From Macrostomum lignano (Eukaryota): a stretch of DNA of 64,000 nucleotides. A program made the translations under genes and the position numbers. The stretch spans positions 124,001 to 188,000 of the forward strand of contig NIVC01000309.1 of assembly GCA_002269645.1 (NCBI GenBank). The letters run 5' to 3'. The notes beneath the pieces are model-generated. The model was not told the origin of the DNA and did no database searches. It saw only the letters and a list, made by a program, of their open reading frames with translations. Positions 1 to 49,589 of the stretch are shown in pieces. The number at the start of each line of letters is the position of its first letter. The first letter of the stretch is position 1.

Positions 1-3000
1 TTCATCCGCCATTGGCAATCTGGTGCCCAAACTGAATCACTCTTCGTGCGTCTACAACTCCAGTCTAAACATCTCGCTGATCAAGGATGTGTTAGGTAAG
101 TTCCGTTTCTCTGGAAATGTTCAAAGTCCAAGAACACCGGGCGGCTTTTACAGAAGCAGTCAACATCGCTTTAGTTGGTTTGCTCAAAGGCTTTAAACAA
201 CTGATTTCCTATTACTTCAACGTCCCGCTCTTCTGATGCTAATTATCGGCAGTGGCAACAGGCTAATTAATATTTGATTTTGTTTCATATGCTCACCTTC
301 TTGTCATTTGGCAGTCTCTTTTTCAACCCCAATCTCGCTTCTCCACTGCATCGCTTTGTCACACAACTAAAAAAATTCTGCGCTCTCATTCACAGTAAGA
401 AAACGTTTACATTCTCAGGTTCCAGCATCTCAGACAACAGCTACATCATTGGCAGCGTGCTGCAAGGCCCGCTCTGCTTCCACAGATCTGCCAGCAGCGG
501 CAGCGGACTGGACATCAACTACTGCGGCGTTCCGTATTGCAGTGAGTGAAAAAAATGTCTGTTGTTCAGGTTTAGTTTGACTATTTTTAGGCGGCAGCTA
601 GCAAAGAGACAGCAAAAAGTATAGCATTTTGCAAGCTAGTAGAGACTATGAGCAAGCAATTTAATCCAAGATAGCAAAGCACATGCATTTTGAGCCTCAC
701 TGCTGGTTCTCTATGGTGTGTCAAACCATAGACAATGTGTGTCAAAGTGTGTCAAACCATAGACAATGTGTGTCAAAGTGTGTCAAACCATAGACAATAT
801 GTGTCAAAGTGTGTCAAACCATAGACAATGTGTGTCAAAGTGTGTCAAACCATAGACAATGTGTGTCAAAGTATGTCAAACCATAGACAATGTGTGTCAA
901 AGTATGTCAAACCATAGACAATGTGTGTCAAAGTGTGTCAAACCATAGACAATTTGTGTCAAAGTGTGTCAAACCATAGACAATGTGTGTCAAAGTGTGT
1001 CAAACCATAGACAATGTGTGTCAAAGTGTGTCAAACCATAGACAATGTGTGTCAAAGTGTGTCAAACCATAGACAATTTGTGTCAAAGTGTGTCAAACCA
1101 TAGACAATATGTGTCAAAGTGTGTCAAACCATAGACAATGTGTGTCAAAGTGTGTCAAACCATAGACAATGTGTGTCAAAGTGTGTCAAACCATAGACAA
1201 TGTGTGTCAAAGTGTGTCAAACCATAGACAATGTGTGTCAAAGTGTGTCAAACCATAGACAATGTGTGTCAAAGTGTGTCAAACCATAGACAATGTGTGT
1301 CAAAGTGTGTCAAACCATAGACAATGTGTGTCAAAGTGTGTCAAACCATAGACAATGTGTGTCAAAGTGTGTCAAACCATAGACAATGTGTGTCAAAGTG
1401 TGTCAAACCATAGACAATGTGTGTCAAAGTGTGTCAAACCATAGACAATGTGTGTCAAAGTGTGTCAAACCATAGACAATGTGTGTCAAAGTGTGTCAAA
1501 CCATAGACAATGTGTGTCAAAGTGTGTCAAACCATAGACAATGTGTGTCAAAGTGTGTCAAACCATAGACAATTTGTGTCAAAGTGTGTCAAACCATAGA
1601 CAATGTGTGTCAAAGTGTGTCAAACCCAGGGACAACTAAAACCCTCGGGACGCGAAACGAGCCAATTCATGGCAAAAAGTCTGAGGGGCTCGCTTAAAAG
1701 TATTGTTCTATGGCTTTTTCAAGTCTTCTCTGCTATCAGGCATTAACGGTTAGATTAAATAGTAAAGCGAGGCAATGTCGAGTATTTAATTTAAAGAATA
1801 GGAACCTTTCGTCAAAAGTTTGTACATTTCGTCAAACATAATTACGCAGTTTCGCTGAGCTCCTGATAGACTAGCAAAAACTGACTGGATCACATCGGCT
1901 GCGTCGGTTTCTGTGCCAACTTCTCCTGTACCTGCTAGTTGCAGCTGCAGCGTTCGGGGATGAGGCAATTGCAATAGCTTCCGTAGGTAAGAGTAAGCCG
2001 AACTACTGATCAAGTAGAGCAATGCTGACTGTCGCACTAGTGAAATGTCATAGCGGCGATTGTTCCGATTTACTAATGTAAGGCTAAGTTGTCGAATCAA
2101 AAACTGAAGCGACGAATCCAAATCAGAGTCAGAATCTATATCATCACTGATTCTACTAACAAACGCTTCGACTTCACGTTGGGGATTGGCGTCGGAATTT
2201 TTGCACCGCATGACAACAGCATCCAGTTGCGACCAGCGCTTGAGTGTCGGTTGAAATCCAAACAAGTCTCGAACCGAAATCGGTGTATGCAGTTTGAATG
2301 CACGAATCAGAAAGTTGGGTGAGACAAAAATTCGAACAGACAGGTCTCCATCTTTATCTAACGTAAACAAGTAAACGTCTCGTTCAGAATAGCTGTGTTC
2401 AGTGCATGTCGAGATACGACATCCGAATTTTTCACCTCAGCTCGAAAACTTTCCCATGCCGGCAAAAAATCAAGCAGCTGAAAAGCGTCCATCTCATCGA
2501 TGTCGCCGCACTTCGCATCAGAAAGAACACCGCGCTTTTCGGCCTGTCTGTCTTGGTCTAAAATAAGAGTAAAAATAAAAGTAAGATAATTGTGAGCGGC
2601 AAAATCGATATAGACGCTAAGTGTTGAGCAATCTTTAAGTTACGTACCTTGGTTCTGAGCAAAACACGAGCTAGGAACTCCATTAAAAACAGAAGGAGGA
2701 TTAATTGGCCTTTCGGTAGAGTTTTTCTTGACCATTGGAGCATCGCTTGGCCAATGCTTTACGCACACGCCCATATTGTCAGTCACTCTCTAAAATAATA
2801 AATTTTGGGTTTCAAGTTGTTTGGACGAGACTGGCATGCAGAATTGAAGCGGAATTATGCAGCAGTATTGACAGCAAATGATCTGGCTTCTTACCTGGAG
2901 AATATTTGGCAGCGCCGTTCTCCATCGCTCTCGCTCCTGTGGATCTCTGGGAAACGCAAATGTCCGTGTTCGAACGGCTTCAGAGTTGTAATTTGACGAG

Positions 3001-6000
3001 CACGGAAATACGCTGCACTTTCTTGGCATTTCATCAAGTGAATAAAAAATGCTTCTCTTGATATAGTTCAGCTTAGCTTCACTGCTGGCCGCAGCTAAAG
3101 CAATTTTAATTTGCTTGATAGCAGAGAAGACTTGAAAAAGCCATAGAACAATACTTTTAAGCGAGCCCCTCAGATTTTTTGCCATGAATTGGCTCGTTTC
3201 GCGTCCCGAGGGTTTTAGTTGTCCCTGGTCAAACCATAGACAATGTGTGTCAAGAATGTCAAACCATAGACAATGTGTGTCAAAGAATGTCAAACCATAG
3301 ACAATGTGTGTCAAAGTATGTCAAACCATAGACAATGTGTGTCAAAGTGTGTCAAACCATAGACAATGTGTGTCAAAGAATGTCAAACCATAGACAATGT
3401 GTGTCAAAGTGTGTCAAACCATAGACAATGTGTGTCAAAGTATGTCAAACCATAGACAATGTGTGTCAAAGTGTGTCAAACCATAGACAATATGTGTCAA
3501 AGTGTGTCAAACCATAGACAATGTGTGTCAAAGTGTGTCAAACCATAGACAATGTGTGTCAAAGTGTGTCAAACCATAGACAATGTGTGTCAAAGTGTGT
3601 CAAACCATAGACAATGTGTGTCAAAGTGTGTCAAACCATAGACAATGTGTGTCAAAGTGTGTCAAACCATAGACAATGTGTGTCAAAGTGTGTCAAACCA
3701 TAGACAATGTGTGTCAAAGTGTGTCAAACCATAGACAATGTGTGTCAAAGTGTGTCAAACCATAGACAATGTGTGTCAAAGTGTGTCAAACCATAGACAA
3801 TGTGTGTCAAAGTGTGTCAAACCATAGACAATGTGTGTCAAAGTGTGTCAAACCATAGACAATTTGTGTCAAAGTGTGTCAAACCATAGACAATATGTGT
3901 CAAAGTGTGTCAAACCATAGACAATGTGTGTCAAAGTGTGTCAAACCATAGACAATGTGTGTCAAAGTGTGTCAAACCATAGACAATGTGTGTCAAAGTG
4001 TGTCAAACCATAGACAATGTGTGTCAAAGTGTGTCAAACCATAGACAATGTGTGTCAAAGTGTGTCAAACCATAGACAATGTGTGTCAAAGTGTGTCAAA
4101 CCATAGACAATGTGTGTCAAAGTGTGTCAAACCATAGACAATGTGTGTCAAAGTGTGTCAAACCATAGACAATGTGTGTCAAAGTGTGTCAAACCATAGA
4201 CAATGTGTGTCAAAGTGTGTCAAACCATAGACAATGTGTGTCAAAGTGTGTCAAACCATAGACAATGTGTGTCAAAGTGTGTCAAACCATAGACAATGTG
4301 TGTCAAAGTGTGTCAAACCATAGACAATGTGTGTCAAAGTGTGTCAAACCATAGACAATGTGTGTCAAAGTGTGTCAAACCATAGACAATGTGTGTCAAA
4401 GTGTGTCAAACCGGCAGGCAATTTACGAGCGTAATCCTTGGAGCACTCATTTAAGCACTATCTTGCTCGGCCTTTTCATTAATTTCATGCATGCCTCCAA
4501 CCAAACCAACCAGGAAGCTCCATATGAAAAAGTTACGCCGTAGAAAAAGGTTCAGCAAAAAAATTCACTTAACGAAACCTGAATTGGTAGTCTCTACTAG
4601 TTCGACTTGTAGAAGACTACCTAGCTCGACCATAGACAATAAAGTCAACTCGACCATAGACAAGACAGTCAACTCGACCATAGACAAGACAGTCAACTCG
4701 ACCATAGACAAGACAGTCAACTAGACCATAGACAAGACAGTCAACTCGATCATAGACAAGACAGTCAACTAGACCATAGACAATAAAGTCAACTCGACCA
4801 TAGACAAGACAGTCAACTCGACCATAGACAAGACAGTCAACTAGACCATAGACAAGACAGTCAACTAGACCATAGACAAGACAGTCAACTAGACCATAGA
4901 CAAGAAAGTCAACTCGACCATAGACAAGACAGTCAACTCGACCATAGACAAGACAGTCAACTCGACCATAGACAAGACAGTCAACTTGACCGTAGGCAAT
5001 AATCGTCGGGCACCTTCCGAGTGTGCTAAAAAGTCTATAGCTTCATGTATTAGAAAATGAATTTGCTTTTAACTAAATCTAAAGGACTAATAGTGCACTT
5101 TAGAATGCAGGTTAATAAGTAAAAATTTTTCATAAGCGAAATAAAAACAAATCGACTTAACTTTTTGTTAATCAAGCCTCGCTTAGAGAAACCACAAAAA
5201 GCTTGAGGCGCATTTTTGTTGCAGGCACTATTTTAATGCAGCTGGTTATAAATTATTTATGAACTGTAGGAATGCTTTAGGCTGACTACACAAAAGAAAA
5301 AGAAGTCTTGTTCAAATGTATGAGGGGCCTATTTACCATGTGCAAGATTTCTCATGCCACTAGCATGAGTTGAGTCCTACTATGAACTTTCCACGCATAT
5401 GCAGCAACTAACTAAAGAAAGAGTTCTGTGATAAAAACTAGTCGTAGTACTCGAACAAGTACCATGTCGTTTCTCTGCTTCTGAAGGCAAGAAATATAAA
5501 GATGGTTCAACGCAGAGAACTACTTTCGGAGTTAAAATTTTTGATAGCATTGTATTATATGTAATCTATTGTTTAAGTGAATTAAAGCGAAATGTCATTT
5601 CTGTTAACGATTTTTTCATAATTTAAACAAATGATTTAGTTGCTAGTGGCATTGTGTCACTAAAATATGTAGGAAATTAGCTTGACTTATTTGACTCAGC
5701 TGCAGGGGCTCCGGGCATCCGGCTACAGTGGGGAGGCGTCGCCTGACGACCTCTGGCAACCAACAGGCAGCTGGTGCTGCGGTGTCGCACAGGGAGATCC
5801 GGTAGTGCTGGTGTCCGAAACGTGGTCCCTCTCCCGGTCCCCCTCGCTCGCCCGGTGGCTCTTAGGTAGCGGACGAGCTGGCAGAGATTCTCTGGCCTGA
5901 AAACGGGCTGAGGTAGGTGAGCCAAGGACTACTTATATGCTAGTGGTCCTTGAGGTGAGCCTGTCCTGAGTAAAGGCGGGCAAGTCACAGATGAAGCGCT

Positions 6001-9000
6001 CCGCATTCTCAACAAAAGAGATGCAAAATGGGCACTCATCACTACGGATTTTTCCCTGGAGGTAGCGATGCATGGCCTGAGAGAGCCATGGTCACCGGCC
6101 TGATGTCCCTGGGCGGTCCGCTATATTTAGGAACAAGTTAAAGATTGCACAAATCAATTAAAAAATGATCTGAACCAACTGTACATTAATGTGAATCGGC
6201 TTTCAAAGAAGCCGTCAAAACGCGTTAGAAACGTCCCGACGAGTAAATGCCGGTTTGCATTACACGAGTCAAAGGCTGCTCAATTGTTAAATCAAAGCCA
6301 TTAAAATTTTATTTGAACAATCTATGGTCCACTGAACTACTGCTAGTAATGCGAGCTGGTCTTTTTATCCTCTGTGGTTGTAAAGAAAAATAAATCAGGC
6401 AAATAATATTGAAAATGAGCATTAGATCATACATATCTGCTTCCTATTAAAACTATTGGCTACTAATGTGTTGAAAAATTAATATGTGCTATATTTTAGT
6501 AGTTTATTTTGCAAATATATAGCCAGCCTTTAGCTAAAGAGTTTGTAGGAAACAGTGTTTAACTTGGCTTAAATCGTCCTTACAATTCGCGCAGGGAAAA
6601 GCGCCAACGCCCTGTCAAACTGCTCATCACTGAGTCAGAGGGTCGCCATCAACACGGCTTACATGGGCTCAGTGCGCGAGTCGCGATCTGGAAAGCCGTG
6701 TCTGTCCTGGCAAGCCCTGGCTAATGGCAGTCTGAGCCGCCGGTTCCGCAACTTGAATCCGGCCTACGAGTTCCGAGTGTTCCTGCCTGACAGCGAATCT
6801 GTCGCTAGCGTTGGCAGGGGCTGCCGCAGCGCCGCAGTGATGTTCAAGGACAACAGCAGCAGCCTGGGCTGGCAGTCCCTTACCAAGCTCGTCATAGACA
6901 GCGAAATCGGACTGGGTCCCTGGTGTCTGGTTGAGAAGCAGGGCTACACAAATCTCACGATGGAGAGCTGCAGTGTGCCAGAATGCTGTGAGTTTAGGAC
7001 GGTAGTTTATCCACAACGTGAGATCACAGGTAGTTTTTGGGACTTGACAAACTCGACGAGTTGACAGAATAGCTGGGATGCTGATGGTTTTGGTATGATT
7101 CGTTCAAGATTTAAGTGAAGCAGGACAATTATTTCAGTAGGTTTTGTGTATTTATGATGGTTCAATGTGGTTCATCTTAGTATTTTTAGGAAAAAATTAA
7201 CACACGAAGTACAAATTATCCCGGGTTATTTCTCAGAAAATAAATCATTTGTTTTTAATTGAGCATGCCCGTCTGTTGTTACACGTATGATGCGTCAAAA
7301 AAGTAAAAAGTAGCTTCTAGGAAACCGCAAATGTTGCATGAATATCGATGCGACACTATTTACTATTTTTAGCAACCTCGCTGAAGTGCATCTCAGGCCT
7401 GCTGCACCAGAAGTACGGACCTCACGTGCTCTCCAAGCTGGTCGGTCCGAGCTTGGACGTCACCCTGCTCGACTGCAGCTTCGGTGACAAGAAGTGCACA
7501 CCGGCTGACTTCACTGCGCTGCACCATCCCTACTACGGCGCCTGCTACAAGTTCAACAGCGCTCCGTTCCTTCGAGACCTGTCGCCGATGCAGCACGGTT
7601 TGCGTCCGCTCAGCCTGAAGCTGTTCGCCGACGATCATGACTACCTGGGGAACCGGCGTCCGGACACCTTCACGGCCGTCCGAGCAGTTATGGGCGGCCC
7701 GTACAATCTCGGAGAAGCGAGTGACCCGGCTGGATTCAACTTGATCGTGATGCCGCCGGGAGCTTATCCGGGCACCTCACATGCCATTCCAATTTACACG
7801 GGGGCTCGGTCCACTGTTCGTATAAGCTACATCCTGGACATGGACAACACAACGAGGGGCCTTTGCAACAGTAACGAGTCAACCATTGACTACAACATCT
7901 ACAGCTGGAGCCCGACTGTACTTCGGCCGAAAACTGAGCAGAGTTTTAAGTCGCCTGATCCCTACTTTTTGTAAGTGCTTTAGCGTGTTGAAAACGTTTG
8001 GGTGAATGTGCCTTTGCGTGTAGATCTTAGGTCTAAGTCGAGCAGTAACAAGTACCTTCTTCCATGGTACATTCTCGATCAGGGGCGTCGCCACCGGGGG
8101 GGGGGACAGGGGGACATGTCCCCCCAGTAAGAGCTTTGGGCGGATATGCCAATGCTTTGTCCCCCCCCCCCCCCTAACCTACCTTGTGACCCGTTGTGGA
8201 AAGCAATGGTTTAGTTTCAAGGCGCTAAAATGAGTGCCTGCGGCGCTAAAATGAGAGCCTGCGGCGCTAAAATGAGAGCCTGCGGCGCTAAAATGAGAGC
8301 CTGCGGCGCTAAAATGAGAGCCTGCGGCGCTAAAATGAGTGCCTGCGGCGCTAAAATGAGTGCCTGCGGCGCTAAAATAAGAGCCTGCGGCGCTAAATGA
8401 GAGCCTGCGGCGCTAAAATAAGTGTCTGCGGTGCCAAAATAATCACTGACAGTACCACTCAGAAAATAATGTACACATGTGTAGAAATTTAGTCATGTAC
8501 ATGTATAATTTGCAAAATTCTTTGCTTTGCCCCCCACCATAAAATCCATGGCGACACCCCTGTTCTCGATAGGAAGTTTTCCGACTGAATGAGTAGTCCT
8601 GAAAAGTAACCCGACCTTGTTTTCCCGCTCAGCCAATTCAACAAAAGCTCTTTGGCTTTCACGAGCAACCAAGAGTCCTGCGCCAATCTGGCCGTCATTG
8701 ACGAGTTTGTCCGCGAATGCAATTGTCTGCCCTACTCACTGCCGATCCCTGTAAAGTACAAAAACGTAGTCGACTGCTTTCATCTGAACAAATCCGAGCC
8801 CGACGCTGTTCTTCGCCTAATCGCGAGGGAGGACTGCGCCGTGAAACTTTTCTCGCAACTGGAGACACTCACCGAGACTTTCTGGGCCGGCTGCAGGGCC
8901 AACTGTAAGATGCCCAAGTACGCCATGCAGCTTGTGAGTTTGGACAAGAAACCAGCCAAGCATTGCTTTTGAAACCAGTTGTACAGAGCTAAACAATTAT

Positions 9001-10116
9001 TGCGACTTAATGATTTATGGATGGTGTCAGGTGTGGAACGTTCAGTTTAGTACAAAAGTCTCGAGAAGGAACTTTCTTCGACAGTAGCTACGTGCTACTG
9101 GTGTCCGCAGCGCAGGTTCCCCTTCGGAGAGTCCAGGAGGTGGATGGTCGCTCGCCCGGTAGGTAGAGATACAAGACGAGCGGACAATAGTTCTCTGGCC
9201 AGAAAACGTCGGAAAGGTACGGGTTTGCGCCGAGAAAGGCAAGAATGTCCTGGATAAAGGCAGAGGGAATTCACATATGAAGTGCTTCGCATTCTCAACA
9301 ACAGAGAAGAGGCAGAGTGGGCATTTTTACCTGGAGGTAGCGATGCCTGGCAAATAGCCACGGCCAGAGAGGGCCATGGTTACCACTCTGATGTCCCTGC
9401 GGTTGAGTCAAAGCTGGCTCTGCGGAGGGCGGAAGAAGGAGAGGGGACAGCCGCGCAACATTTTCGGGCAGTCGGGGGCGCTAGCACATCTCTCCCTGTG
9501 CTTGGTTGCCACCCACTGGTTAAATCCAAGTGGTGACAATTACAAAATGTCTATAAGAAGCTTGTTGCGACAACAGAACCAAATTTTGAGTATTTCCAGC
9601 TGAGAACAACTAGTTTTGTTTCCAACCTTCCAGACGACTCAGCCGTGGCCCGACGCGTCCCACGCCGCTTACAACGCGACGCTGCAGTCGCTCACTTCGC
9701 TGGTCGGCTTCCCGAAGCAGGTGAGCCCCGACCAGGGCCTGGCCATGCTCTACTACTCCTACCTGCAGGGTGAGCAGCTGATCCAGCCCAGCTCGGTGAA
9801 GCGCTTCGGCCAGTCGCTGGCCATGCGAGAGGCGGCTCGCAGCAACCTGGCCTGGATCCGGGTCGAGGCCGAGTACCCGATCGGGTCCGGCAGCGCCCAG
9901 GCCGACGGATATCCGGTGGAGAATCTGCTGGCCGAGATGGGCGGCATTCTGGGTCTGTACTGCGGCGTCTCGGTGCTGACCATCTGCGAGCTGATGGACC
10001 TGGTGGGCCGCCTGCTGCACCGGACCGCGCTGCGGTGGATGCGCCGCAGTCAGGTTAGCAGCTCCAACGCCAAGGACGACAAGGTAGTGGAGGTGCAGCC
10101 AGCTAGAAAGCTGTAA
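1..10116 (+). CDS. DEG/ENaC (amiloride-sensitive channel family) subunit, 5'-partial, with kringle-like modules in the ectodomain; exons <1-95, 419-541, 6595-6987, 7373-7970, 8633-8933, 9634-10116
   Basis: All five GT-AG junctions are phase-consistent (1,1,1,2,0). Motifs: LDCSFGDKKCTPADF..HPYYGACYKFN, ECNCLPYSLP, YAMQLTTQPWP, and TM2 ENLLAEMGGILGLYCGVSVLTICELMD (GxS filter). Stop TAA at 10114-10116. Confidence 0.9.
1627..3227 (-). mobile_element. Internally deleted P-element-superfamily (THAP) DNA transposon, about 1.6 kb
   Basis: TIRs of about 110 bp (CAGGGACAACTAAAACCCTCGGG...) with one visible mismatch. 8-bp TSD GTCAAACC at 1619-1626 and 3228-3235. Contains THAP and P-transposase coding remnants. 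Confidence 0.92.
1786..3029 (-). pseudogene. Truncated THAP-domain P-element transposase (spliced; about 3029-2895, 2789-2650, then from about 2557 to 1786)
   Basis: MPRKCSVFPC..FAFPRDPQERERW spliced to VCVKHW..RPINPPSVF forms a C2CH THAP domain. Then RRYD..SAYSYLRKLLQLPHPRTL..CVIMFDEMY. The frame stops soon after the first catalytic D, and a frameshift appears to be needed near 2400. Confidence 0.82.
4624..4990. repeat. 24-bp tandem repeat (ACCATAGACAAGACAGTCAACTCG)
   Basis: Directly visible. Shares the ACCATAGACAA core with the adjacent 31-bp satellite. Confidence 0.93.
5800..6110 (+). repeat. Dispersed repeat copy A (homologous to 9089-9410)
   Basis: Shared blocks TCGCTCGCCCGGT, TTCTCTGGCC-GAAAACG, CGCATTCTCAACAA, CCTGGAGGTAGCGATGC and CTGATGTCCCTG. 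Confidence 0.75.
8080..8562. mobile_element. hAT-type MITE with an internal 21-bp tandem array
   Basis: TIRs CAGGGGCGTCGCCA / TGGCGACACCCCTG. 8-bp TSD TTCTCGAT at 8072-8079 and 8563-8570. Internal repeats GCCTGCGGCGCTAAAATGAGA at about 8221-8440. Confidence 0.9.
9089..9410 (+). repeat. Dispersed repeat copy B (homologous to 5800-6110)
   Basis: Same conserved blocks as copy A, located in channel intron 5. Confidence 0.75.
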
Positions 10117-10213
10117 CATGACTGGCATTGCAAAACAAATAAAAATCTAGTAAGAGAGCATCGGTAAGAAGAAAGTTAATGAGGAACTCCCTGGTCTGTT
10201 AGTGTTGTGTTTT

Positions 10214-10988: not shown

Positions 10989-12105
10989 TCACAACGATGT
11001 CAGCGGCTGGCATTGCTTTGTTCTCAACCGAGCAGCACTGCCTTCTGGTAGCTCCTGAAATGAAGAAGCATTGAAATATGATTATTTAACTAGGCATGAG
11101 TAGTTATTCCGCATCAGATAGATTTCTCACTCAACTTGTCCTCCTAAACCTGTCCTACTCAACCTGTCCCACTCAACCTGTCCTCCTAAACCTGTCCTAC
11201 TCAACCTGTCCCACTCAACCTGTCCTCCTAAACCTGTCCTCCTAAACCTGTCCTACTCAACCTGTCCTACTCAACCTGTTCTACTCAACCTGTCCTACTC
11301 AACCTGTCCTACTCAACCTGTCCTACTCAACCTGTCCTACTCAACCTGTCCTACTCAACCTGTTCTACTCAACCTGTCCTACTCAACCTGTCCTACTCAA
11401 CCTGTCCTACTCAACCTGTCCTACTCAACCTGTCCTAATCAACCTGTCCTACTCAACCTGTCCTACTCAACCTGTCCTAATCAACCTGTCCTACACAACC
11501 TGTCCTATACTCAACCTGTCCTACTCAACCTGTCCTAATCAACCTGTCCTACACAACCTGTCCTACTCAATCTGTCCTACTCAACCTGTCCTACTCAACC
11601 TGTCCTACTCAACCTGTCCTACTTACCTGTCCTACTTAACCTGTCCTACTTAACCTGTCCTACTCAACCTGTCCTACTTAACCTATCCTACTCAATCTGT
11701 CCTACTCAACCTGCCCTACTTACCTGTCCTACTTAACCTGTCCTACTCAACCTGTCCTACTTAACCTGTCCTACTTACCTGTCCTACTTAACCTGTCCTA
11801 CTCAACCTGTCCTACTTAACCTATCCTCCTAAACCTGTCCCACTCAACCTGTCCTACTCAACCTGTCCTACTTAACCTGTTCTCCTCAACCTGCCTTCCT
11901 CAACCTCCCTTCTTTCCCAGGCCTCACCAGCCGCCGATAAACGAGTACAAAGGTCCTGCCAGCGTGGCTCTGTGCTGTTGCTGCTGTGTCGGATAAGCCG
12001 CAGCTGCAACGCTGCCGCCCGATCTGGCCAATCCAGAGCCTGTCGGTGCAGTGCAACAGCCGCCGCGGCTTCGTTGACCAGCGCTGCTCGGATGCCGCCT
12101 CATGG
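10989..12105 (-). CDS. Possible terminal exons of an unidentified gene (12105-11928 and from 11054 down to about 10989)
   Basis: GC-rich island with acceptor CTGTCAG, donor CTG|GTGAGG and a strong downstream acceptor CTTCTTCATTTCAG. The intron is filled by a 14-bp satellite. Reading frame and product are uncertain. Confidence 0.35.
11127..11900. repeat. 14-bp tandem satellite (TACTCAACCTGTCC)
   Basis: Directly visible array. Confidence 0.96.
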
Positions 12106-12545
12106 CTGACAGGGAGGCTGGAAACAAGGGAGTGGAGTTTGTCGCATTTAAAGTGAGACAGATCGTGCTTGATTAAATTGTTATTTGTTTCCACTTAAAA
12201 TAATATTAAAATTAATTTTAGTGATTTTAGCTCACTTTGCTGCTTACAGTAGGACAAAAGGCGCGTAATAGTCTCAAGTATTTTGTTAGGGAGCAAAAAA
12301 ACAAAGGTAAAACTATTAGCAAAAAATGGTTTCAGTTAAACATTAGCTTAAGGGTGTAGCACCGTTCTTTAGTTAAATATGTCATTAGCTATGTATTAGC
12401 CACAGTTTTTGCTTGCTAAGTTATTAATAAAACGTTATAGCAGAAGATGTACCACCGTTAGCTTGAAATGTTCATTACAATACCTGGTCCACTGAAATGA
12501 TTTAAAAGTGGTACTTGGTGTACTTTCTGTAAAAACTAAAAGATA

Positions 12546-16313: not shown

Positions 16314-17897
16314 TTATTGCCGCTTGTTGCTATGCACAGTGCGGATGTGATACTTGAGATGGCTGCTCACACTGAAAGCCTTGCCACAGTAGCTGCAACT
16401 GTATGGCTTCTCGCCTGTGTGGATGCGCATGTGATCCTTGAGATGGCTGCTCACACTGAAAGCCTTGCCACAGTAGCTGCAACTGAATGGCCTCTCGCCT
16501 GTGTGGATGCGCATGTGAGTCTTGAGACTGCCGCTCTCACTGAAAGCCTTGCCACAGTAGCTGCAACTGAATGGCTTCTCGCCTGTGTGGATGCGGATGT
16601 GATTCTTGAGATGGCCGTCTTGACTGAAAGCCTTGCCACAGTAGCTGCAACTGAATGGCTTCTCGCCTGTGTGGATGCGGATGTGATTCTTGAGATGGCC
16701 GTCTTGACTGAAAGCCTTGCCACAGTAGCTGCAACTGAATGGCCTTTCGCCAGTATGAGCTCGCATATGTCTAGTCAGATTTACTTCCCCATGAAACCTA
16801 GCCTTACACACAGAACAGACGTATCGCCTCTCCAACAGATGCACCAATCTCACGTGAGCAATTTTACTCGATTTGCTCTTGAAAACTTTCTCACAAAATC
16901 CGCAAATTAAATCGCCGCCCGAGTTTAAAATGTCGGCCTCTTCATACAGCGGCCTGTCACTAGCGCTGTCGCCGTCTTCGGCTACAATTTTGTACAGTTT
17001 GGCCATCTCGTCGCCATAGTAGACAAGAAGCTCGTGATCCGGGCTGATGTCCCGGATAGCAATGTAATAGACATTATTATCCCACTGGAAGGCTATCATG
17101 TTCTGCTCGCAGAGGTTCCTACTACAATTAACATAGCGCATCCAATTGGAGAAGCGCATGTCGGCGGCGTCAACCCATTCGCAAGACTTGTCGCGTCGAA
17201 TCTCCCAGGCGTAGGAAGACGCTTCAGCGGTGGCTTTGTCAGTGATTCGCTGGCCAAGATAGGGTCCGAAGATGGAGCCCCTAGCGATAGGAGCTTCGGC
17301 CCACACGCCATTTCCAGCGTGTCGGCCAACAGCGGAGCGGCAGATCCTCATGCCGTCAGGCAGTGTGAGATCAGAGAAATTCTCAGCAGTGCCAAATCCA
17401 TCCGGCATTTTATTGCTCACCCAGCGTTGATGCAGCTGGCAGCAATCGCCAAACACCTCTTTGCCGCAGTCATAGCAGTACAAGCTGCGCTCATCCGTCT
17501 CCTTGTAGACGCAGGCAGTTTTACCGCGCCTCGGCGGCAGTTGGCGCGGCTCTGTCGGTAGAGAAGCCGCGATGACAGCAGAGCTAGAACTCTTGGACTT
17601 GCTGGAACAGGCAGAAGCAGTTTTGATCTTCTTTGACTTGGCCACTGGCTGATAGTCAGGATCGCTGTCGCTATCATGTCGGTTGCGCTTCTTTTGCACA
17701 GTACAGGCTCGTTTTGGCTGCTTTTGCCTAGCAACTGTTGCCTTGCAAACAGCAGCTGTTGACGCTGCTCGCTGCTGCTCAACTGGTTGTTGCAGATCTG
17801 GGACACCTTCAGCACCAAATAGTTCTTTAATAAGGCGCTCATTTTCTGCCTTCCTGTTCAACCGCAGCAGCTCATAACTGCTAATGGTTGCTGACAT
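16314..17897 (-). CDS. PRDM9-like PR/SET histone methyltransferase with zinc knuckle and 7 C2H2 zinc fingers; uninterrupted ORF, no KRAB domain visible
   Basis: 527-aa ORF. Knuckle YCYDC..CCQLH. SET motifs FGPY, NWMRYVNC, EQNMIAF..VYY, ELLVYYG. TGEKP/TGERP-linked fingers. Confidence 0.88.
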   Translation of the reverse strand: MSATISSYELLRLNRKAENERLIKELFGAEGVPDLQQPVEQQRAASTAAVCKATVARQKQPKRACTVQKKRNRHDSDSDPDYQPVAKSKKIKTASACSSKSKSSSSAVIAASLPTEPRQLPPRRGKTACVYKETDERSLYCYDCGKEVFGDCCQLHQRWVSNKMPDGFGTAENFSDLTLPDGMRICRSAVGRHAGNGVWAEAPIARGSIFGPYLGQRITDKATAEASSYAWEIRRDKSCEWVDAADMRFSNWMRYVNCSRNLCEQNMIAFQWDNNVYYIAIRDISPDHELLVYYGDEMAKLYKIVAEDGDSASDRPLYEEADILNSGGDLICGFCEKVFKSKSSKIAHVRLVHLLERRYVCSVCKARFHGEVNLTRHMRAHTGERPFSCSYCGKAFSQDGHLKNHIRIHTGEKPFSCSYCGKAFSQDGHLKNHIRIHTGEKPFSCSYCGKAFSESGSLKTHMRIHTGERPFSCSYCGKAFSVSSHLKDHMRIHTGEKPYSCSYCGKAFSVSSHLKYHIRTVHSNKRQ

Positions 17898-49064: not shown

Positions 49065-49589
49065 ATGTCTGGCGACAGCAGCGCAGCACCAATCCCGCCG
49101 GCTGTAATGTGGGCCCAGCGCAAGGACAAACTGTACGTCACCATCTGTCTGGAGGATGTGCAGAATAAAAAGCTGGAGCTCACCGACAAGCAGCTAATAT
49201 TTAGCGGCGTCGGCGGTACAGACAGGAAGCCGCACGCTGTCACTATCGACTTTCACAAGGAGGTGAACCCTGACGACAGCAAGCAGCTGGTCACCGACAG
49301 GGAGATTGTCATGTGCATCAAGAAGAAAGAGTCCGGGCATTATTGGCCTCGGCTGCTGTCCGATTCCACTAAGCGGCACTGGCTGAAAACCGACTTCAAT
49401 CGCTGGCTGGACGAAGACGATTCAGATGACGACATGGCTGCCAGGGAAAACAACCTGGAGGAGATGATGGCCAGGATGGGCTCGGGATTCGGCGGAGGGG
49501 ACGACGGACTGCCGTTGCCAGGCGACGATATAGGCGCGGACGAGCCGGATCAGGATAGCGACGATGAGGACCTGCCGGATCTGGAGTGA
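49065..49589 (+). CDS. PTGES3: Hsp90 co-chaperone p23 / prostaglandin E synthase 3 homolog, single ORF
   Basis: WAQR..LYVTI, WPRL, WLKTDFNRWLDEDDSD and an acidic tail. Confidence 0.93.
   Translation: MSGDSSAAPIPPAVMWAQRKDKLYVTICLEDVQNKKLELTDKQLIFSGVGGTDRKPHAVTIDFHKEVNPDDSKQLVTDREIVMCIKKKESGHYWPRLLSDSTKRHWLKTDFNRWLDEDDSDDDMAARENNLEEMMARMGSGFGGGDDGLPLPGDDIGADEPDQDSDDEDLPDLE

What the first reader, a model, noticed from the sequence alone, without database searches (positions are those of the whole stretch)
1..7970. DEG/ENaC channel with kringle-like domains spliced into its extracellular loop
Seen in sequence: exon 6595-6987 encodes a six-cysteine module with kringle order (C..AYMG..SRSGKPCLSW..GCRS..GPWCL..ESCSVPEC). 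The preceding exons end in a second such module (SCVY..GPLCF..INYCGVPYC). Both are bounded by phase-1 introns and splice in frame into DEG/ENaC post-finger sequence (DCSFG..C..DF..YGACYKFN) and TM2. Established: kringles are protein/ligand-binding modules of secreted proteases and ROR-type receptors, not standard DEG/ENaC parts; nematode degenerins carry different Cys-rich inserts in this region. Inference: exon shuffling produced a channel gated or tethered by an extracellular protein ligand or matrix.
Basis: partly seen in the sequence, partly recalled or inferred. Interest (0 to 1): 0.82.

Follow-up and report, generated by a model that had tools for sequence, protein, structure and literature searches.

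The report
Flatworm sodium channel carrying kringle modules
The window holds most of a Macrostomum lignano DEG/ENaC ion-channel gene whose outer "finger" region contains two divergent kringle-derived modules added by exon shuffling; the architecture is real and apparently undescribed, but it belongs to a wider habit of this channel family of taking up foreign extracellular modules, and its function is untested.

Summary
Six + strand exons (1-95, 419-541, 6595-6987, 7373-7970, 8633-8933, 9634-10116) join through canonical splice sites into a stop-free 663-aa reading frame. It is a DEG/ENaC protein (Pfam ASC E 6e-29) with TM2 and a G-V-S filter.

Exon 6595-6987 is a six-cysteine module (K2). It falls below Pfam's Kringle cut-off on its own. 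A profile of K2 from eight paralogues hits only kringle structures in the PDB and matches a kringle profile at E 5.5e-15. K1 (exons 1-2) is more eroded, but both of its ends match kringles.

The window is from M. lignano. Transcript-derived GenBank models of paralogues carry TM1-K1-K2-ASC-TM2 in a single ORF, often with a WSC domain nested in K1. That WSC domain is a phase 1-1 cassette exon, and it lies where the window has intron 96-418.

All module boundaries are phase-1 introns, so an exon-shuffling origin is well supported. The kringle fold could not be confirmed by structure prediction (pLDDT 50-60). Ligand or matrix gating remains inference.

Mosaic DEG/ENaCs already exist (C. elegans EGAS; predicted hemichordate LDLa and PAN inserts). 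This is therefore a new variant of a known kind.

The parts
1..95 (+). Exon, running in from upstream of the window. It encodes the middle of kringle-like module K1, including C3 (..LNHSSCVYNSS..). It ends in a split codon (phase 1).
   Evidence: Translation and splice sites. It is 90% identical to the C-terminal end of M. lignano P0166, which stops at exactly this exon end.
96..418 (+). Phase-1 intron inside K1. In paralogues, a 276-nt phase 1-1 exon encoding a WSC domain sits at this position (15-16 residues after C3).
   Evidence: exon map of P0004 on locus L001; Pfam WSC in P0006, P0007, P0156 and P0164.
419..541 (+). Exon of 123 nt, phase 1-1. It encodes the C-terminal third of K1 with C4-C6 (GPLCF..INYCGVPYC).
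   Evidence: hhalign of the K1 family against a kringle profile: probability 97.6%, E 3.8e-12, over these 24 columns. Multi-kringle proteins are hit by this region plus the start of K2.
542..6594 (+). Phase-1 intron of 6,053 bp between K1 and K2. It is filled with a 31-bp satellite (716-1626 and 3228-4412), a 24-bp satellite (4625-4999) and a 1.6-kb TIR transposon (1626-3228).
6595..6987 (+). Single exon of 393 nt, phase 1-1. It encodes the whole of kringle-like module K2 (six Cys; Y-M-G, S-G-K-P-C-L-S-W, C-R, G-P-W-C, C-S-V-P-E-C), with a long insertion between C3 and C4.
   Evidence: Pfam Kringle 24.9 bits, E 2.5e-5, below the 34.3 cut-off. Single sequence against PDB: 26 of 28 weak hits are kringles. 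Family profile against PDB: the best 60 hits are all kringle proteins, with single-kringle chains at about E 5e-6. hhalign against a kringle profile: probability 98.4%, E 5.5e-15, 81 columns.
7373..7970 (+). Exon encoding the post-insert DEG/ENaC core (LLDCSFGDKKCTPADF..YGACYKFN and following strands).
   Evidence: Pfam ASC. Alignment to ASIC5 from residue 180 and to ENaC subunits from about residue 250. 90.5% identical to P0003.
8633..8933 (+). Exon encoding the Cys-rich thumb region of the ASC domain.
   Evidence: tblastn of P0005, P0151 and P0007.
9634..10116 (+). Last exon: wrist, TM2 (about 9940-10011, GGILGLYCGVSVLTICELMDLVG with a G-V-S filter), short cytoplasmic tail and TAA stop. An AATAAA lies at 10138-10143.
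   Evidence: Alignment of TM2 to ASIC5, ASIC1 and FaNaC structures.

Best explanation
Bases 1-10116 (+) are the 3' five-sixths of a Macrostomum lignano DEG/ENaC channel gene. Two kringle-derived disulfide modules (K1, K2) are built into the finger region of the extracellular domain. They lie between the post-TM1 strands and finger helices and the conserved C-x-F..C..DF..G-x-C-Y-x-F-N strand.

Origin (shown):
- The modules entered by exon shuffling; every module boundary is a phase-1 intron.
- In paralogues a WSC domain sits inside K1 as a separate phase 1-1 cassette exon, at the site of window intron 96-418.
- The gene belongs to a lineage-specific family in M. lignano, with at least five divergent lineages.

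Mechanism (inferred):
- The subunit assembles into a trimeric Na+-selective channel.
- The K1-K2 pair (plus WSC in paralogues) forms an enlarged, glycosylated peripheral finger.
- This finger binds an extracellular glycan, protein or matrix partner and so biases gating. It would do this from the position where ENaC carries its protease-sensitive GRIP domain and where ASIC and FaNaC bind their activating ligands.
- The classical lysine-binding residues of plasminogen-type kringles are not kept, so any ligand is not bound in the classical way.
For: Gene and frame:
- Canonical splice sites and a 663-aa stop-free join.
- Pfam ASC 101.8 bits against a 23.6 cut-off.
- TM2 and the core align to ASIC5, ASIC1, ENaC and FaNaC structures.
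- Paralogue tblastn hits fall on the same exons.

Kringle descent:
- An exhaustive HMMER search of 1.84 billion proteins with the P0001 profile (P0001 is the M. lignano protein holding TM1, K1 and most of K2) retrieved genuine multi-kringle proteins at E 2e-6 to 5e-4. The matching part is the end of K1 plus the start of K2, and the hits score Pfam Kringle 1e-45 to 1e-161.
- The K2 family profile hits only kringle chains among the best 60 PDB matches: HGF, tPA, plasminogen, prothrombin, ROR1/2, apo(a) and Kremen.
- hhalign against the kringle profile: K2 E 5.5e-15, K1 C-terminal part 3.8e-12, K1 N-terminal part 1.5e-6.
- UniProt names P0003 and P0005 'Kringle domain-containing protein'.

One transcript:
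- GenBank Mlig_3_7 proteins are TransDecoder ORFs of RNA-seq-based transcripts (PMC5730564).
- PAA86857 (1033 aa), PAA82974 (1052 aa) and PAA47210 (1091 aa) contain TM1, K1[WSC], K2, the ASC core and TM2 in one ORF.
- Separate gene models span the junctions: P0001 runs from TM1 through K1 into most of K2, P0166 covers TM1 and the N-terminal half of K1, and P0003 runs from K2 into the ASC core.

Exon shuffling:
- Phases in the window.
- The K1-N, WSC and K1-C exons are all 1-1 in L001, and the outer K2 boundaries are conserved in position and phase.

Extracellular location:
- Seven N-x-S/T sequons within the two modules.

Insert site:
- The N-terminal part aligns to ENaC-gamma 31-111, and the post-insert part to ENaC-gamma from 252 and ASIC5 from 180.
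Against: - No transcript or cDNA for this exact locus was available. GenBank has no model here, probably because transcripts overlapping repeats were filtered out.
- TM1 and the start of K1 lie outside the window.
- Each single module is below Pfam's Kringle gathering score, and K1 alone gives no significant PDB hit.
- AF2 gave only pLDDT 50 and 60, and Foldseek found no kringle. The fold is therefore not shown.
- K2 has a 33-residue C3-C4 loop where a canonical kringle has 11, and it lacks N-P-D-x-D after C3.
- K2 is much less conserved between close paralogues than the neighbouring exon (68% against 90%). This could mean relaxed constraint rather than a binding function.
- The K1 of one paralogue (P0005) has lost its C-terminal half.
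- Nothing here bears on ligand binding, gating or even channel activity. The mosaic EGAS channels of C. elegans gave no currents in oocytes (PMC10424705).
Confidence: 0.72

Rival explanations
1. The modules are kringle relics that now serve only as a structural spacer or folding scaffold of an enlarged finger. They have no ligand-binding or gating role, and this copy may even be a decaying paralogue.
For: - Scores are below Pfam's cut-off.
- The loops are much expanded and N-P-D-x-D is lost.
- K2 diverges much faster than the adjacent ASC exon between close paralogues.
- P0005 has lost half of K1.
- No GenBank transcript model exists for this locus.
Against: - All six Cys and the Y-x-G, C-x-x-W, C-R and C-x-(V/I)-P-x-C motifs are kept across paralogues that are only 23-30% identical. 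This argues for long-term purifying selection on the fold.
- The reading frame is intact over six exons.
- The family has expanded and gained a further binding-type domain, WSC.
Confidence: 0.2
2. The kringle exons are optional cassette exons or belong to a separate transcript, so the main channel product of this locus lacks them.
For: - Exons 419-541 (123 nt) and 6595-6987 (393 nt) are both phase 1-1 and multiples of three, so skipping them keeps the frame.
- The 6-kb repeat-filled intron separates K1 from K2.
- All database models of this WSC-less clade are fragments.
Against: - Transcript-derived ORFs of paralogues include the modules between TM1 and TM2.
- The gene models P0001 and P0003 bridge K1-K2 and K2-ASC.
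- The first window exon (K1 middle) has no other in-frame partner.
- No separate start, signal peptide or stop flanks the modules.
Confidence: 0.06
3. The modules are not kringle homologues. They are an unrelated lineage-specific Cys-rich domain that resembles kringles by convergence in a few Cys-flanking motifs.
For: - Matches concentrate in short motifs around Cys residues.
- There is no structural confirmation.
- The single-sequence E-values are weak.
Against: - Motif order and Cys order match over the whole domain: 81 aligned columns, kringle positions 6-90, E 5.5e-15.
- The best 60 PDB hits of the K2 profile are all kringle proteins.
- True kringle proteins were recovered from 1.84 billion sequences.
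- The phase-1 boundaries are typical of kringle exons.
- Long-loop kringles of 86-107 aa exist in an ostracod.
Confidence: 0.02

Closest known systems
C. elegans EGAS-1 to EGAS-4 (EGF plus ASC domain ion channels)
   Same: They are DEG/ENaC subunits that have acquired extracellular modules of the exon-shuffling repertoire. This makes them named precedents for mosaic channels of this family (PMC10424705).
   Different: The module type is EGF rather than kringle or WSC. The position of the EGF repeats relative to the ASC domain was not examined here. The EGAS channels gave no currents in oocytes, so they offer no functional model.
ENaC alpha/gamma GRIP domain and the ASIC/FaNaC finger domain
   Same: They occupy the same place in the fold. 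The K1-K2 insert lies between the part that aligns to ENaC-gamma 31-111 and the part that aligns from about 252. From my own knowledge, this variable, peripheral region is where gating regulators act in known channels: proteases in ENaC, and protons, toxins or peptides in ASIC and FaNaC.
   Different: There is no sequence relation to GRIP or to the finger helices. Here the region holds autonomous disulfide modules of foreign origin. No furin-type site is conserved among the paralogues.
Nematode degenerins (MEC-4, MEC-10, DEG-1) with Cys-rich domains and an extracellular regulatory domain
   Same: They are DEG/ENaCs with extra Cys-rich sequence in the extracellular loop and a proposed link to extracellular matrix (my own knowledge).
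   Different: The degenerin inserts are not kringle-related. No homology to them was seen in any search here.
Kringle domains of plasminogen, HGF, tPA, prothrombin, ROR1/2 and Kremen
   Same: Cys order and the Y-x-G, S-G-x-x-C-x-x-W, C-R, P-W-C and C-x-(V/I)-P-x-C motifs match. There are significant profile matches and phase-1 exon boundaries.
   Different: The loops are much longer (C1-C6 of 122 aa). There is no N-P-D-x-D after C3. Scores are below Pfam's threshold. The host protein is an ion channel rather than a protease, growth factor or receptor kinase.
Kremen1/2 ectodomain (Kringle-WSC-CUB)
   Same: From my own knowledge, it is the only well-known protein that combines kringle and WSC. 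The Kremen1 kringle is the top, though non-significant, PDB hit of the K1 profile.
   Different: In the channel paralogues the WSC domain is nested inside K1 rather than following it. No CUB domain was detected by Pfam. Descent from a Kremen-like gene is not shown.
Predicted hemichordate DEG/ENaCs with LDL-receptor class A repeats (Saccoglossus XP_077866593) or PAN/apple domains (Ptychodera XP_070558481)
   Same: Foreign extracellular modules are inserted between the N-terminal ASC part and ASC profile position about 128-131. This is the same finger site.
   Different: The module types and the phylum differ. These are computational RefSeq models that I did not examine further.

Membership tests
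DEG/ENaC (Pfam ASC, PF00858) | Significant match to the ASC profile above the curated cut-off | tested here: met
   101.8 bits against a cut-off of 23.6, E 6.2e-29, profile positions 145-454 of 455.
DEG/ENaC (Pfam ASC, PF00858) | C-terminal TM2 with a G-x-S selectivity-filter motif preceded by a G-G-x-L-G-L stretch | tested here: met
   LLAEMGGILGLYCGVSVLTICEL at about 9940-10011. It aligns to TM2 of ASIC5, ASIC1 and FaNaC structures.
DEG/ENaC (Pfam ASC, PF00858) | N-terminal H-G motif, TM1 and post-TM1 strands | tested here: inconclusive
   This part lies upstream of the window. It is present in the nearest relatives P0166 and P0001 (TTAHG, a TM1-like hydrophobic stretch; ASC profile from position 1; alignment to ENaC-gamma 31-111). 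P0166 ends at the window's first exon boundary.
DEG/ENaC (Pfam ASC, PF00858) | Trimeric, amiloride-sensitive, Na+-selective channel activity | not testable with these tools
   This needs electrophysiology.
Kringle (Pfam PF00051) | Match above Pfam's gathering score | tested here: not met
   K2 alone scores 24.9 bits (E 2.5e-5) against a cut-off of 34.3. The K1 fragment gives no hit. Paralogues score 14-24 bits.
Kringle (Pfam PF00051) | Homology to bona fide kringles by profile methods | tested here: met
   K2 profile against PDB: the best 60 hits are all kringle proteins, with E down to 5.8e-10 (tandem) and about 5e-6 (single). hhalign: K2 E 5.5e-15 over 81 columns, K1 C-terminal part 3.8e-12, K1 N-terminal part 1.5e-6. 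Multi-kringle proteins were retrieved from 1.84 billion sequences.
Kringle (Pfam PF00051) | Six Cys in kringle order with the flanking motifs (Y-x-G; G-x-x-C-x-x-W; C-R; W-C; C-x-x-P-x-C) | tested here: met
   K2 has C-25-C-40-C-33-C-14-C-4-C with all motifs present. The N-P-D after C3 is replaced by S-A-A. K1 keeps them in the paralogues.
Kringle (Pfam PF00051) | Triple-loop fold with 1-6, 2-4 and 3-5 disulfides | tested here: inconclusive
   AF2 models had pLDDT 50 and 60. Foldseek against PDB found no match with E<=0.001 and no kringle among the top hits. The alignment was too shallow (3-7 sequences).
Lysine-binding kringles (plasminogen K1/K4 type) | Anionic D-x-D centre after C3 and an aromatic groove | tested here: not met
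   C-R-S-A-A-V-M replaces C-R-N-P-D-x-D in the alignment to the kringle profile. The residue roles are from my own knowledge.
Exon-shuffled class 1-1 module | Module bounded on both sides by phase-1 introns | tested here: met
   In the window, the introns at 95/419, 541/6595 and 6987/7373 are all phase 1. The same holds for the K1-N, WSC and K1-C exons and for the outer K2 boundaries in paralogue locus L001.
Kremen-like KR-WSC-CUB ectodomain | Tandem kringle, WSC and CUB domains in that order | tested here: not met
   The window gene has no WSC domain. The paralogues have WSC nested within K1 and no CUB domain by Pfam.

The most novel reading that the evidence does not exclude
Macrostomum has evolved a private family of DEG/ENaC channels whose finger was rebuilt from shuffled binding modules (two kringles, with or without a nested WSC). 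This would turn the channel into a receptor gated or tethered by an extracellular glycan, protein or matrix partner. More generally, the finger of DEG/ENaCs would be a recurrent docking site for shuffled modules across Bilateria (EGF in nematodes, LDLa and PAN in hemichordates, kringle and WSC in flatworms). That would be a modular route to new gating stimuli that has not been described as such.
Probability: 0.3. Interest if true: 0.7.

Novelty: new variant of a known kind. Interest (0 to 1): 0.5.

Why it matters
DEG/ENaC channels are opened by very different stimuli: protons, peptides, proteolysis, touch and bile acids. How new stimuli are acquired is an open question.

A channel family that has imported recognisable protein- or glycan-binding modules into the gating-regulatory finger would be a natural experiment in how an ion channel gains a new extracellular input.

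M. lignano is transgenic- and RNAi-tractable, so the question can be tested.

The locus is also an unusually clean case of exon shuffling: phase 1-1 modules, including one domain (WSC) nested inside another (kringle) as a cassette exon.

The value is limited because mosaic DEG/ENaCs are already known, the proteins are already in databases under automatic names, and no function is shown.

Tried and rejected
1. Spliced 663-aa protein as a query for the exhaustive representative search. I used P0001 plus the K2 exon instead; the profile kept only P0001's 404 columns.
2. AF2 of the K2 exon with 3-sequence and 7-sequence alignments gave pLDDT 50 and 60. Foldseek against PDB returned unrelated folds at E of about 1. 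I treat this as uninformative, not as evidence against a kringle fold.
3. K1 as a single sequence against PDB gave no hit. As a profile it gave only sub-significant kringle hits. Its kringle nature rests on hhalign and on the tandem K1-end/K2-start hits.
4. The search for homologous proteins returned only a few M. lignano proteins. It missed P0003, P0005 and P0007, which the exhaustive search found, so it was not usable as a taxon survey.
5. A second channel copy in the window: none found.
6. Shared repeats between the window and M. lignano locus L001 as a species test: none found. The species was settled instead by an exact protein match.
7. Kremen-like origin: considered because of the KR+WSC combination. 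There is no CUB domain and the domain order differs, so this remains a lead only.
8. A furin-type R-R-F-R in the K2 loop of the window copy is not conserved in P0001 or P0003, so I dropped it.
9. The UniProt name 'CUB domain-containing' for P0165 and P0097 is not reproduced by Pfam.
10. Literature: no paper in the held library links kringle or WSC with degenerin/ENaC architecture.

Full report
**1. What is in the sequence**

Reading the + strand of 1-10,200 gives six open segments joined by canonical splice sites (AG acceptors, GT(A/G)AGT donors). The exons are 1-95, 419-541, 6595-6987, 7373-7970, 8633-8933 and 9634-10116.

The join is a 663-codon frame without stops, ending in TAA at 10114-10116. 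An AATAAA follows 22 nt later.

Introns 96-418, 542-6594 and 6988-7372 are all phase 1. Exons 419-541 (123 nt) and 6595-6987 (393 nt) are symmetric 1-1 exons.

Two corrections are needed:
- TM2 (GGILGLYCGVSVLTICELMDLVG, about 9940-10011) lies outside the range given in the finding.
- The window starts in the middle of the first module, so only C3-C6 of K1 are present.

**2. It is a DEG/ENaC gene of Macrostomum lignano**

Pfam ASC matches residues 227-625 of the joined protein at 101.8 bits (cut-off 23.6, E 6e-29).

The part after the modules aligns to solved ASIC5, ASIC1, ENaC and FaNaC structures. This includes LLDCSFGDKKCTPADF against ASIC5 residue 180 onwards, and TM2 with its G-x-S filter.

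The species is settled by an exact match. ORF 49065-49586 of the window is in the protein collection as an NCBI-sourced protein, in a 90% cluster whose other members are M. lignano BOX15_Mlig002721 proteins.

Close relatives of the channel are also M. lignano proteins:
- P0003 (A0A1I8GPM0) is 83% identical overall and about 99% identical over 150 residues of exon 7373-7970.
- P0166 (A0A1I8G934) carries the H-G motif, TM1 and the N-terminal half of K1. It ends exactly at the window's first exon boundary, with 90% identity.

There is only one copy of the gene in the window.

**3. Are the modules kringles?**

*Single-sequence evidence is weak.*
- The K2 exon scores 24.9 bits against Pfam Kringle, below the 34.3 cut-off (E 2.5e-5). 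The K1 fragment scores nothing.
- K2 against PDB sequences gives only E 0.07-4. However, 26 of the 28 hits are kringles, and both ends of the domain align in the right order.

*Family-level evidence is strong.*
- An exhaustive HMMER search of 1.84 billion cluster representatives used the profile of P0001, which covers TM1, K1 and most of K2. Besides channel relatives, it returned proteins matched several times by profile positions of about 268-337, that is, the end of K1 plus the start of K2.
- Seven of the eight such proteins that I scanned are genuine multi-kringle proteins, with Pfam Kringle E 1e-45 to 1e-161. The eighth (P0014) is an unrelated PKD-domain protein.
- A profile of K2 from eight paralogues finds 84 PDB sequences at E<=1. 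The best 60 are all kringle proteins: HGF, tPA, plasminogen/angiostatin, prothrombin, ROR1/2, apo(a), Kremen1 and uPA. Single-kringle chains score about 5e-6.
- Profile against profile (hhalign, using 23 Pfam-verified kringles), K2 gives probability 98.4%, E 5.5e-15, over 81 columns spanning kringle positions 6-90.
- K1, with the WSC domain excised, gives 97.6% and E 3.8e-12 for its C4-C6 part. Its C1-C2 part gives 90.3% and E 1.5e-6.

*How the modules differ from canonical kringles.*
- Both modules are highly divergent. K2 has Cys spacings of 25-40-33-14-4, against about 20-28-11-11-4 in the canonical domain (my own knowledge). The main insertion lies between C3 and C4.
- Long-loop kringles are not unique to this family. 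Ostracod kringles of 86-107 residues turned up in the same search.
- The N-P-D-x-D stretch after C3, which forms the anionic centre of lysine-binding kringles (my own knowledge), is replaced by S-A-A-V-M.

*The structural test failed to decide.* AF2 with 3 and 7 sequences gave pLDDT 50 and 60, and Foldseek returned nothing meaningful.

**4. One transcript or two?**

I could not obtain RNA evidence for this locus. Evidence from paralogues is good.

GenBank proteins of assembly Mlig_3_7 are TransDecoder ORFs of an RNA-seq-based, genome-guided transcriptome. That plausibly explains why this repeat-laden locus has no GenBank model.

Three such transcript-derived ORFs contain the H-G motif, TM1, K1, K2, the ASC core and TM2 in one frame:
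- PAA86857 (P0151, 1033 aa)
- PAA82974 (P0007, 1052 aa)
- PAA47210 (P0156, 1091 aa)

For the window's own clade, separate gene models bridge each junction:
- P0001 runs from TM1 through K1 into K2.
- P0003 runs from K2 into the ASC core.
- The residues at the junctions are those predicted by my splice sites.

Because the K exons are 1-1 and multiples of three, isoforms without them remain possible.

**5. Exon shuffling and the WSC cassette**

Most paralogues carry a Pfam WSC domain, with E down to 2e-10. It lies between C3 and C4 of K1, so it is one domain nested in another.

I mapped P0004 onto its genomic locus (L001, NIVC01000649.1). The result:
- There are separate exons for the K1 N-part, for WSC (aa 287-378, 276 nt) and for the K1 C-part. 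All are flanked by phase-1 introns.
- The intron before the WSC exon lies 16 residues after C3. The window's intron 96-418 lies 15 residues after C3 and has the same phase.
- The window gene therefore has an empty site where paralogues hold the WSC cassette.
- The K1/K2 and K2/ASC boundaries fall in the split codon directly after C6 in both genes.
- K2 is one exon in the window but three exons in L001.

This pattern is what exon shuffling of class 1-1 modules predicts (the Patthy rule, my own knowledge).

**6. Where the insert sits, and what it may do**

The N-terminal part of the family aligns to ENaC-gamma 31-111. The post-insert part aligns from ENaC-gamma 252 and ASIC5 180. K1-K2 therefore occupies the finger, the most variable and peripheral part of the ectodomain.

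From my own knowledge, this is where ENaC carries the protease-released GRIP domain and where ASIC and FaNaC ligands act.

The modules carry seven N-glycosylation sequons, which fits an extracellular position.

My best mechanistic reading is inferred, not shown. The trimer displays six kringle-type modules (plus WSC in paralogues) that bind a glycan, protein or matrix partner and bias gating.

Points that weaken this reading:
- K2 is far less conserved than the adjacent exon between close paralogues (68% against 90%). This is compatible with relaxed constraint, with diversifying selection, or with gene conversion of the core exon. I cannot tell which.
- P0005 has lost half of K1.
- The nematode mosaic EGAS channels were silent in oocytes.

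**7. Comparison with what is known, and novelty**

In the exhaustive search, every protein that I confirmed to combine an ASC match with a K-module match is from M. lignano. Proteomes of other Macrostomorpha are probably not in the library, so distribution within flatworms is open.

No paper in the held library mentions kringle or WSC together with degenerin/ENaC architecture. UniProt already labels some of these proteins automatically as 'Kringle domain-containing' or 'WSC domain-containing'.

The principle is not new:
- The same search showed predicted hemichordate DEG/ENaCs with nine LDLa repeats (Saccoglossus) or PAN domains (Ptychodera) at the same finger position.

I therefore class this as a new variant of a known kind. 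It would be moderately interesting to DEG/ENaC and protein-evolution specialists, and it is made more attractive by the genetic tractability of M. lignano.

**8. Verdict**

- The kringle descent and the exon-shuffling origin are supported by sequence statistics and gene structure.
- The kringle fold is unconfirmed.
- Function is unknown and only inferred.
- Interest: 0.5.

Noticed in passing
window 716-1626 and 3228-4412: A 31-bp satellite (GTCAAACCATAGACAATGTGTGTCAAAGTGT, about 68 copies in all, 98% matches) lies inside the K1-K2 intron. It is split in two by a transposon insertion.
   Followed up: partly
window 1626-3228: A 1,603-bp element with 117-nt terminal inverted repeats (98% complementary) is inserted in the satellite. 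A minus-strand ORF (1789-2370) has a P-element transposase-like HTH domain (Pfam E 1.3e-7). It is probably an internally deleted P-like or THAP-type DNA transposon.
   Followed up: partly
window 4625-4999: A second satellite with a 24-bp unit (CTCGACCATAGACAAGACAGTCAA, 15.6 copies). It shares the core CCATAGACAA with the 31-bp satellite, which suggests a common origin.
   Followed up: no
window about 5800-6115 and about 9100-9400: A dispersed repeat of roughly 300 bp, about 70% identical, is present in the same orientation in introns 2 and 5 of the channel gene.
   Followed up: partly
window 8090-8180 and 8221-8440: In intron 4 there are G and C homopolymer runs in an inverted arrangement around 8097-8175. 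They are followed by a 21-bp tandem repeat (GGCGCTAAAATGAGAGCCTGC, 10.5 copies).
   Followed up: no
window 11129-11906: A 14-bp tandem repeat (ACTCAACCTGTCCT, about 56 copies) lies just downstream of the channel gene. It produces long spurious ORFs in all frames.
   Followed up: no
window 16314-17897 (-): An uninterrupted 527-aa ORF encodes a PR/SET domain followed by C2H2 zinc fingers (PRDM-like; Pfam PRDM2_PR E 1e-34, zf-H2C2_2 E 3e-52). This exact protein is not in the collection.
   Followed up: partly
window 49065-49586 (+): A 174-aa ORF is identical to an NCBI-listed protein. It clusters with the M. lignano 'CS domain-containing protein' BOX15_Mlig002721. This identifies the source genome.
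   Followed up: yes
window 6597-6986 compared with 7373-7970: Against paralogue P0003, identity is mosaic: 68% in the K2 exon and 90% in the next exon, with about 99% over its central 150 residues. This could reflect gene conversion of the core exon or fast evolution of K2; which one is unresolved.
   Followed up: partly
L001 (NIVC01000649.1) 11962-12237: In a paralogue, the WSC domain is a single 276-nt phase 1-1 exon nested inside kringle 1. In the same paralogue K2 is split into three exons by phase-1 and phase-2 introns that are absent from the window gene.
   Followed up: yes
proteins P0112 and P0065 (not in the window): Predicted hemichordate DEG/ENaCs carry nine LDL-receptor class A repeats (Saccoglossus kowalevskii XP_077866593) or PAN/apple domains (Ptychodera flava XP_070558481) at the same finger position.
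   Followed up: partly
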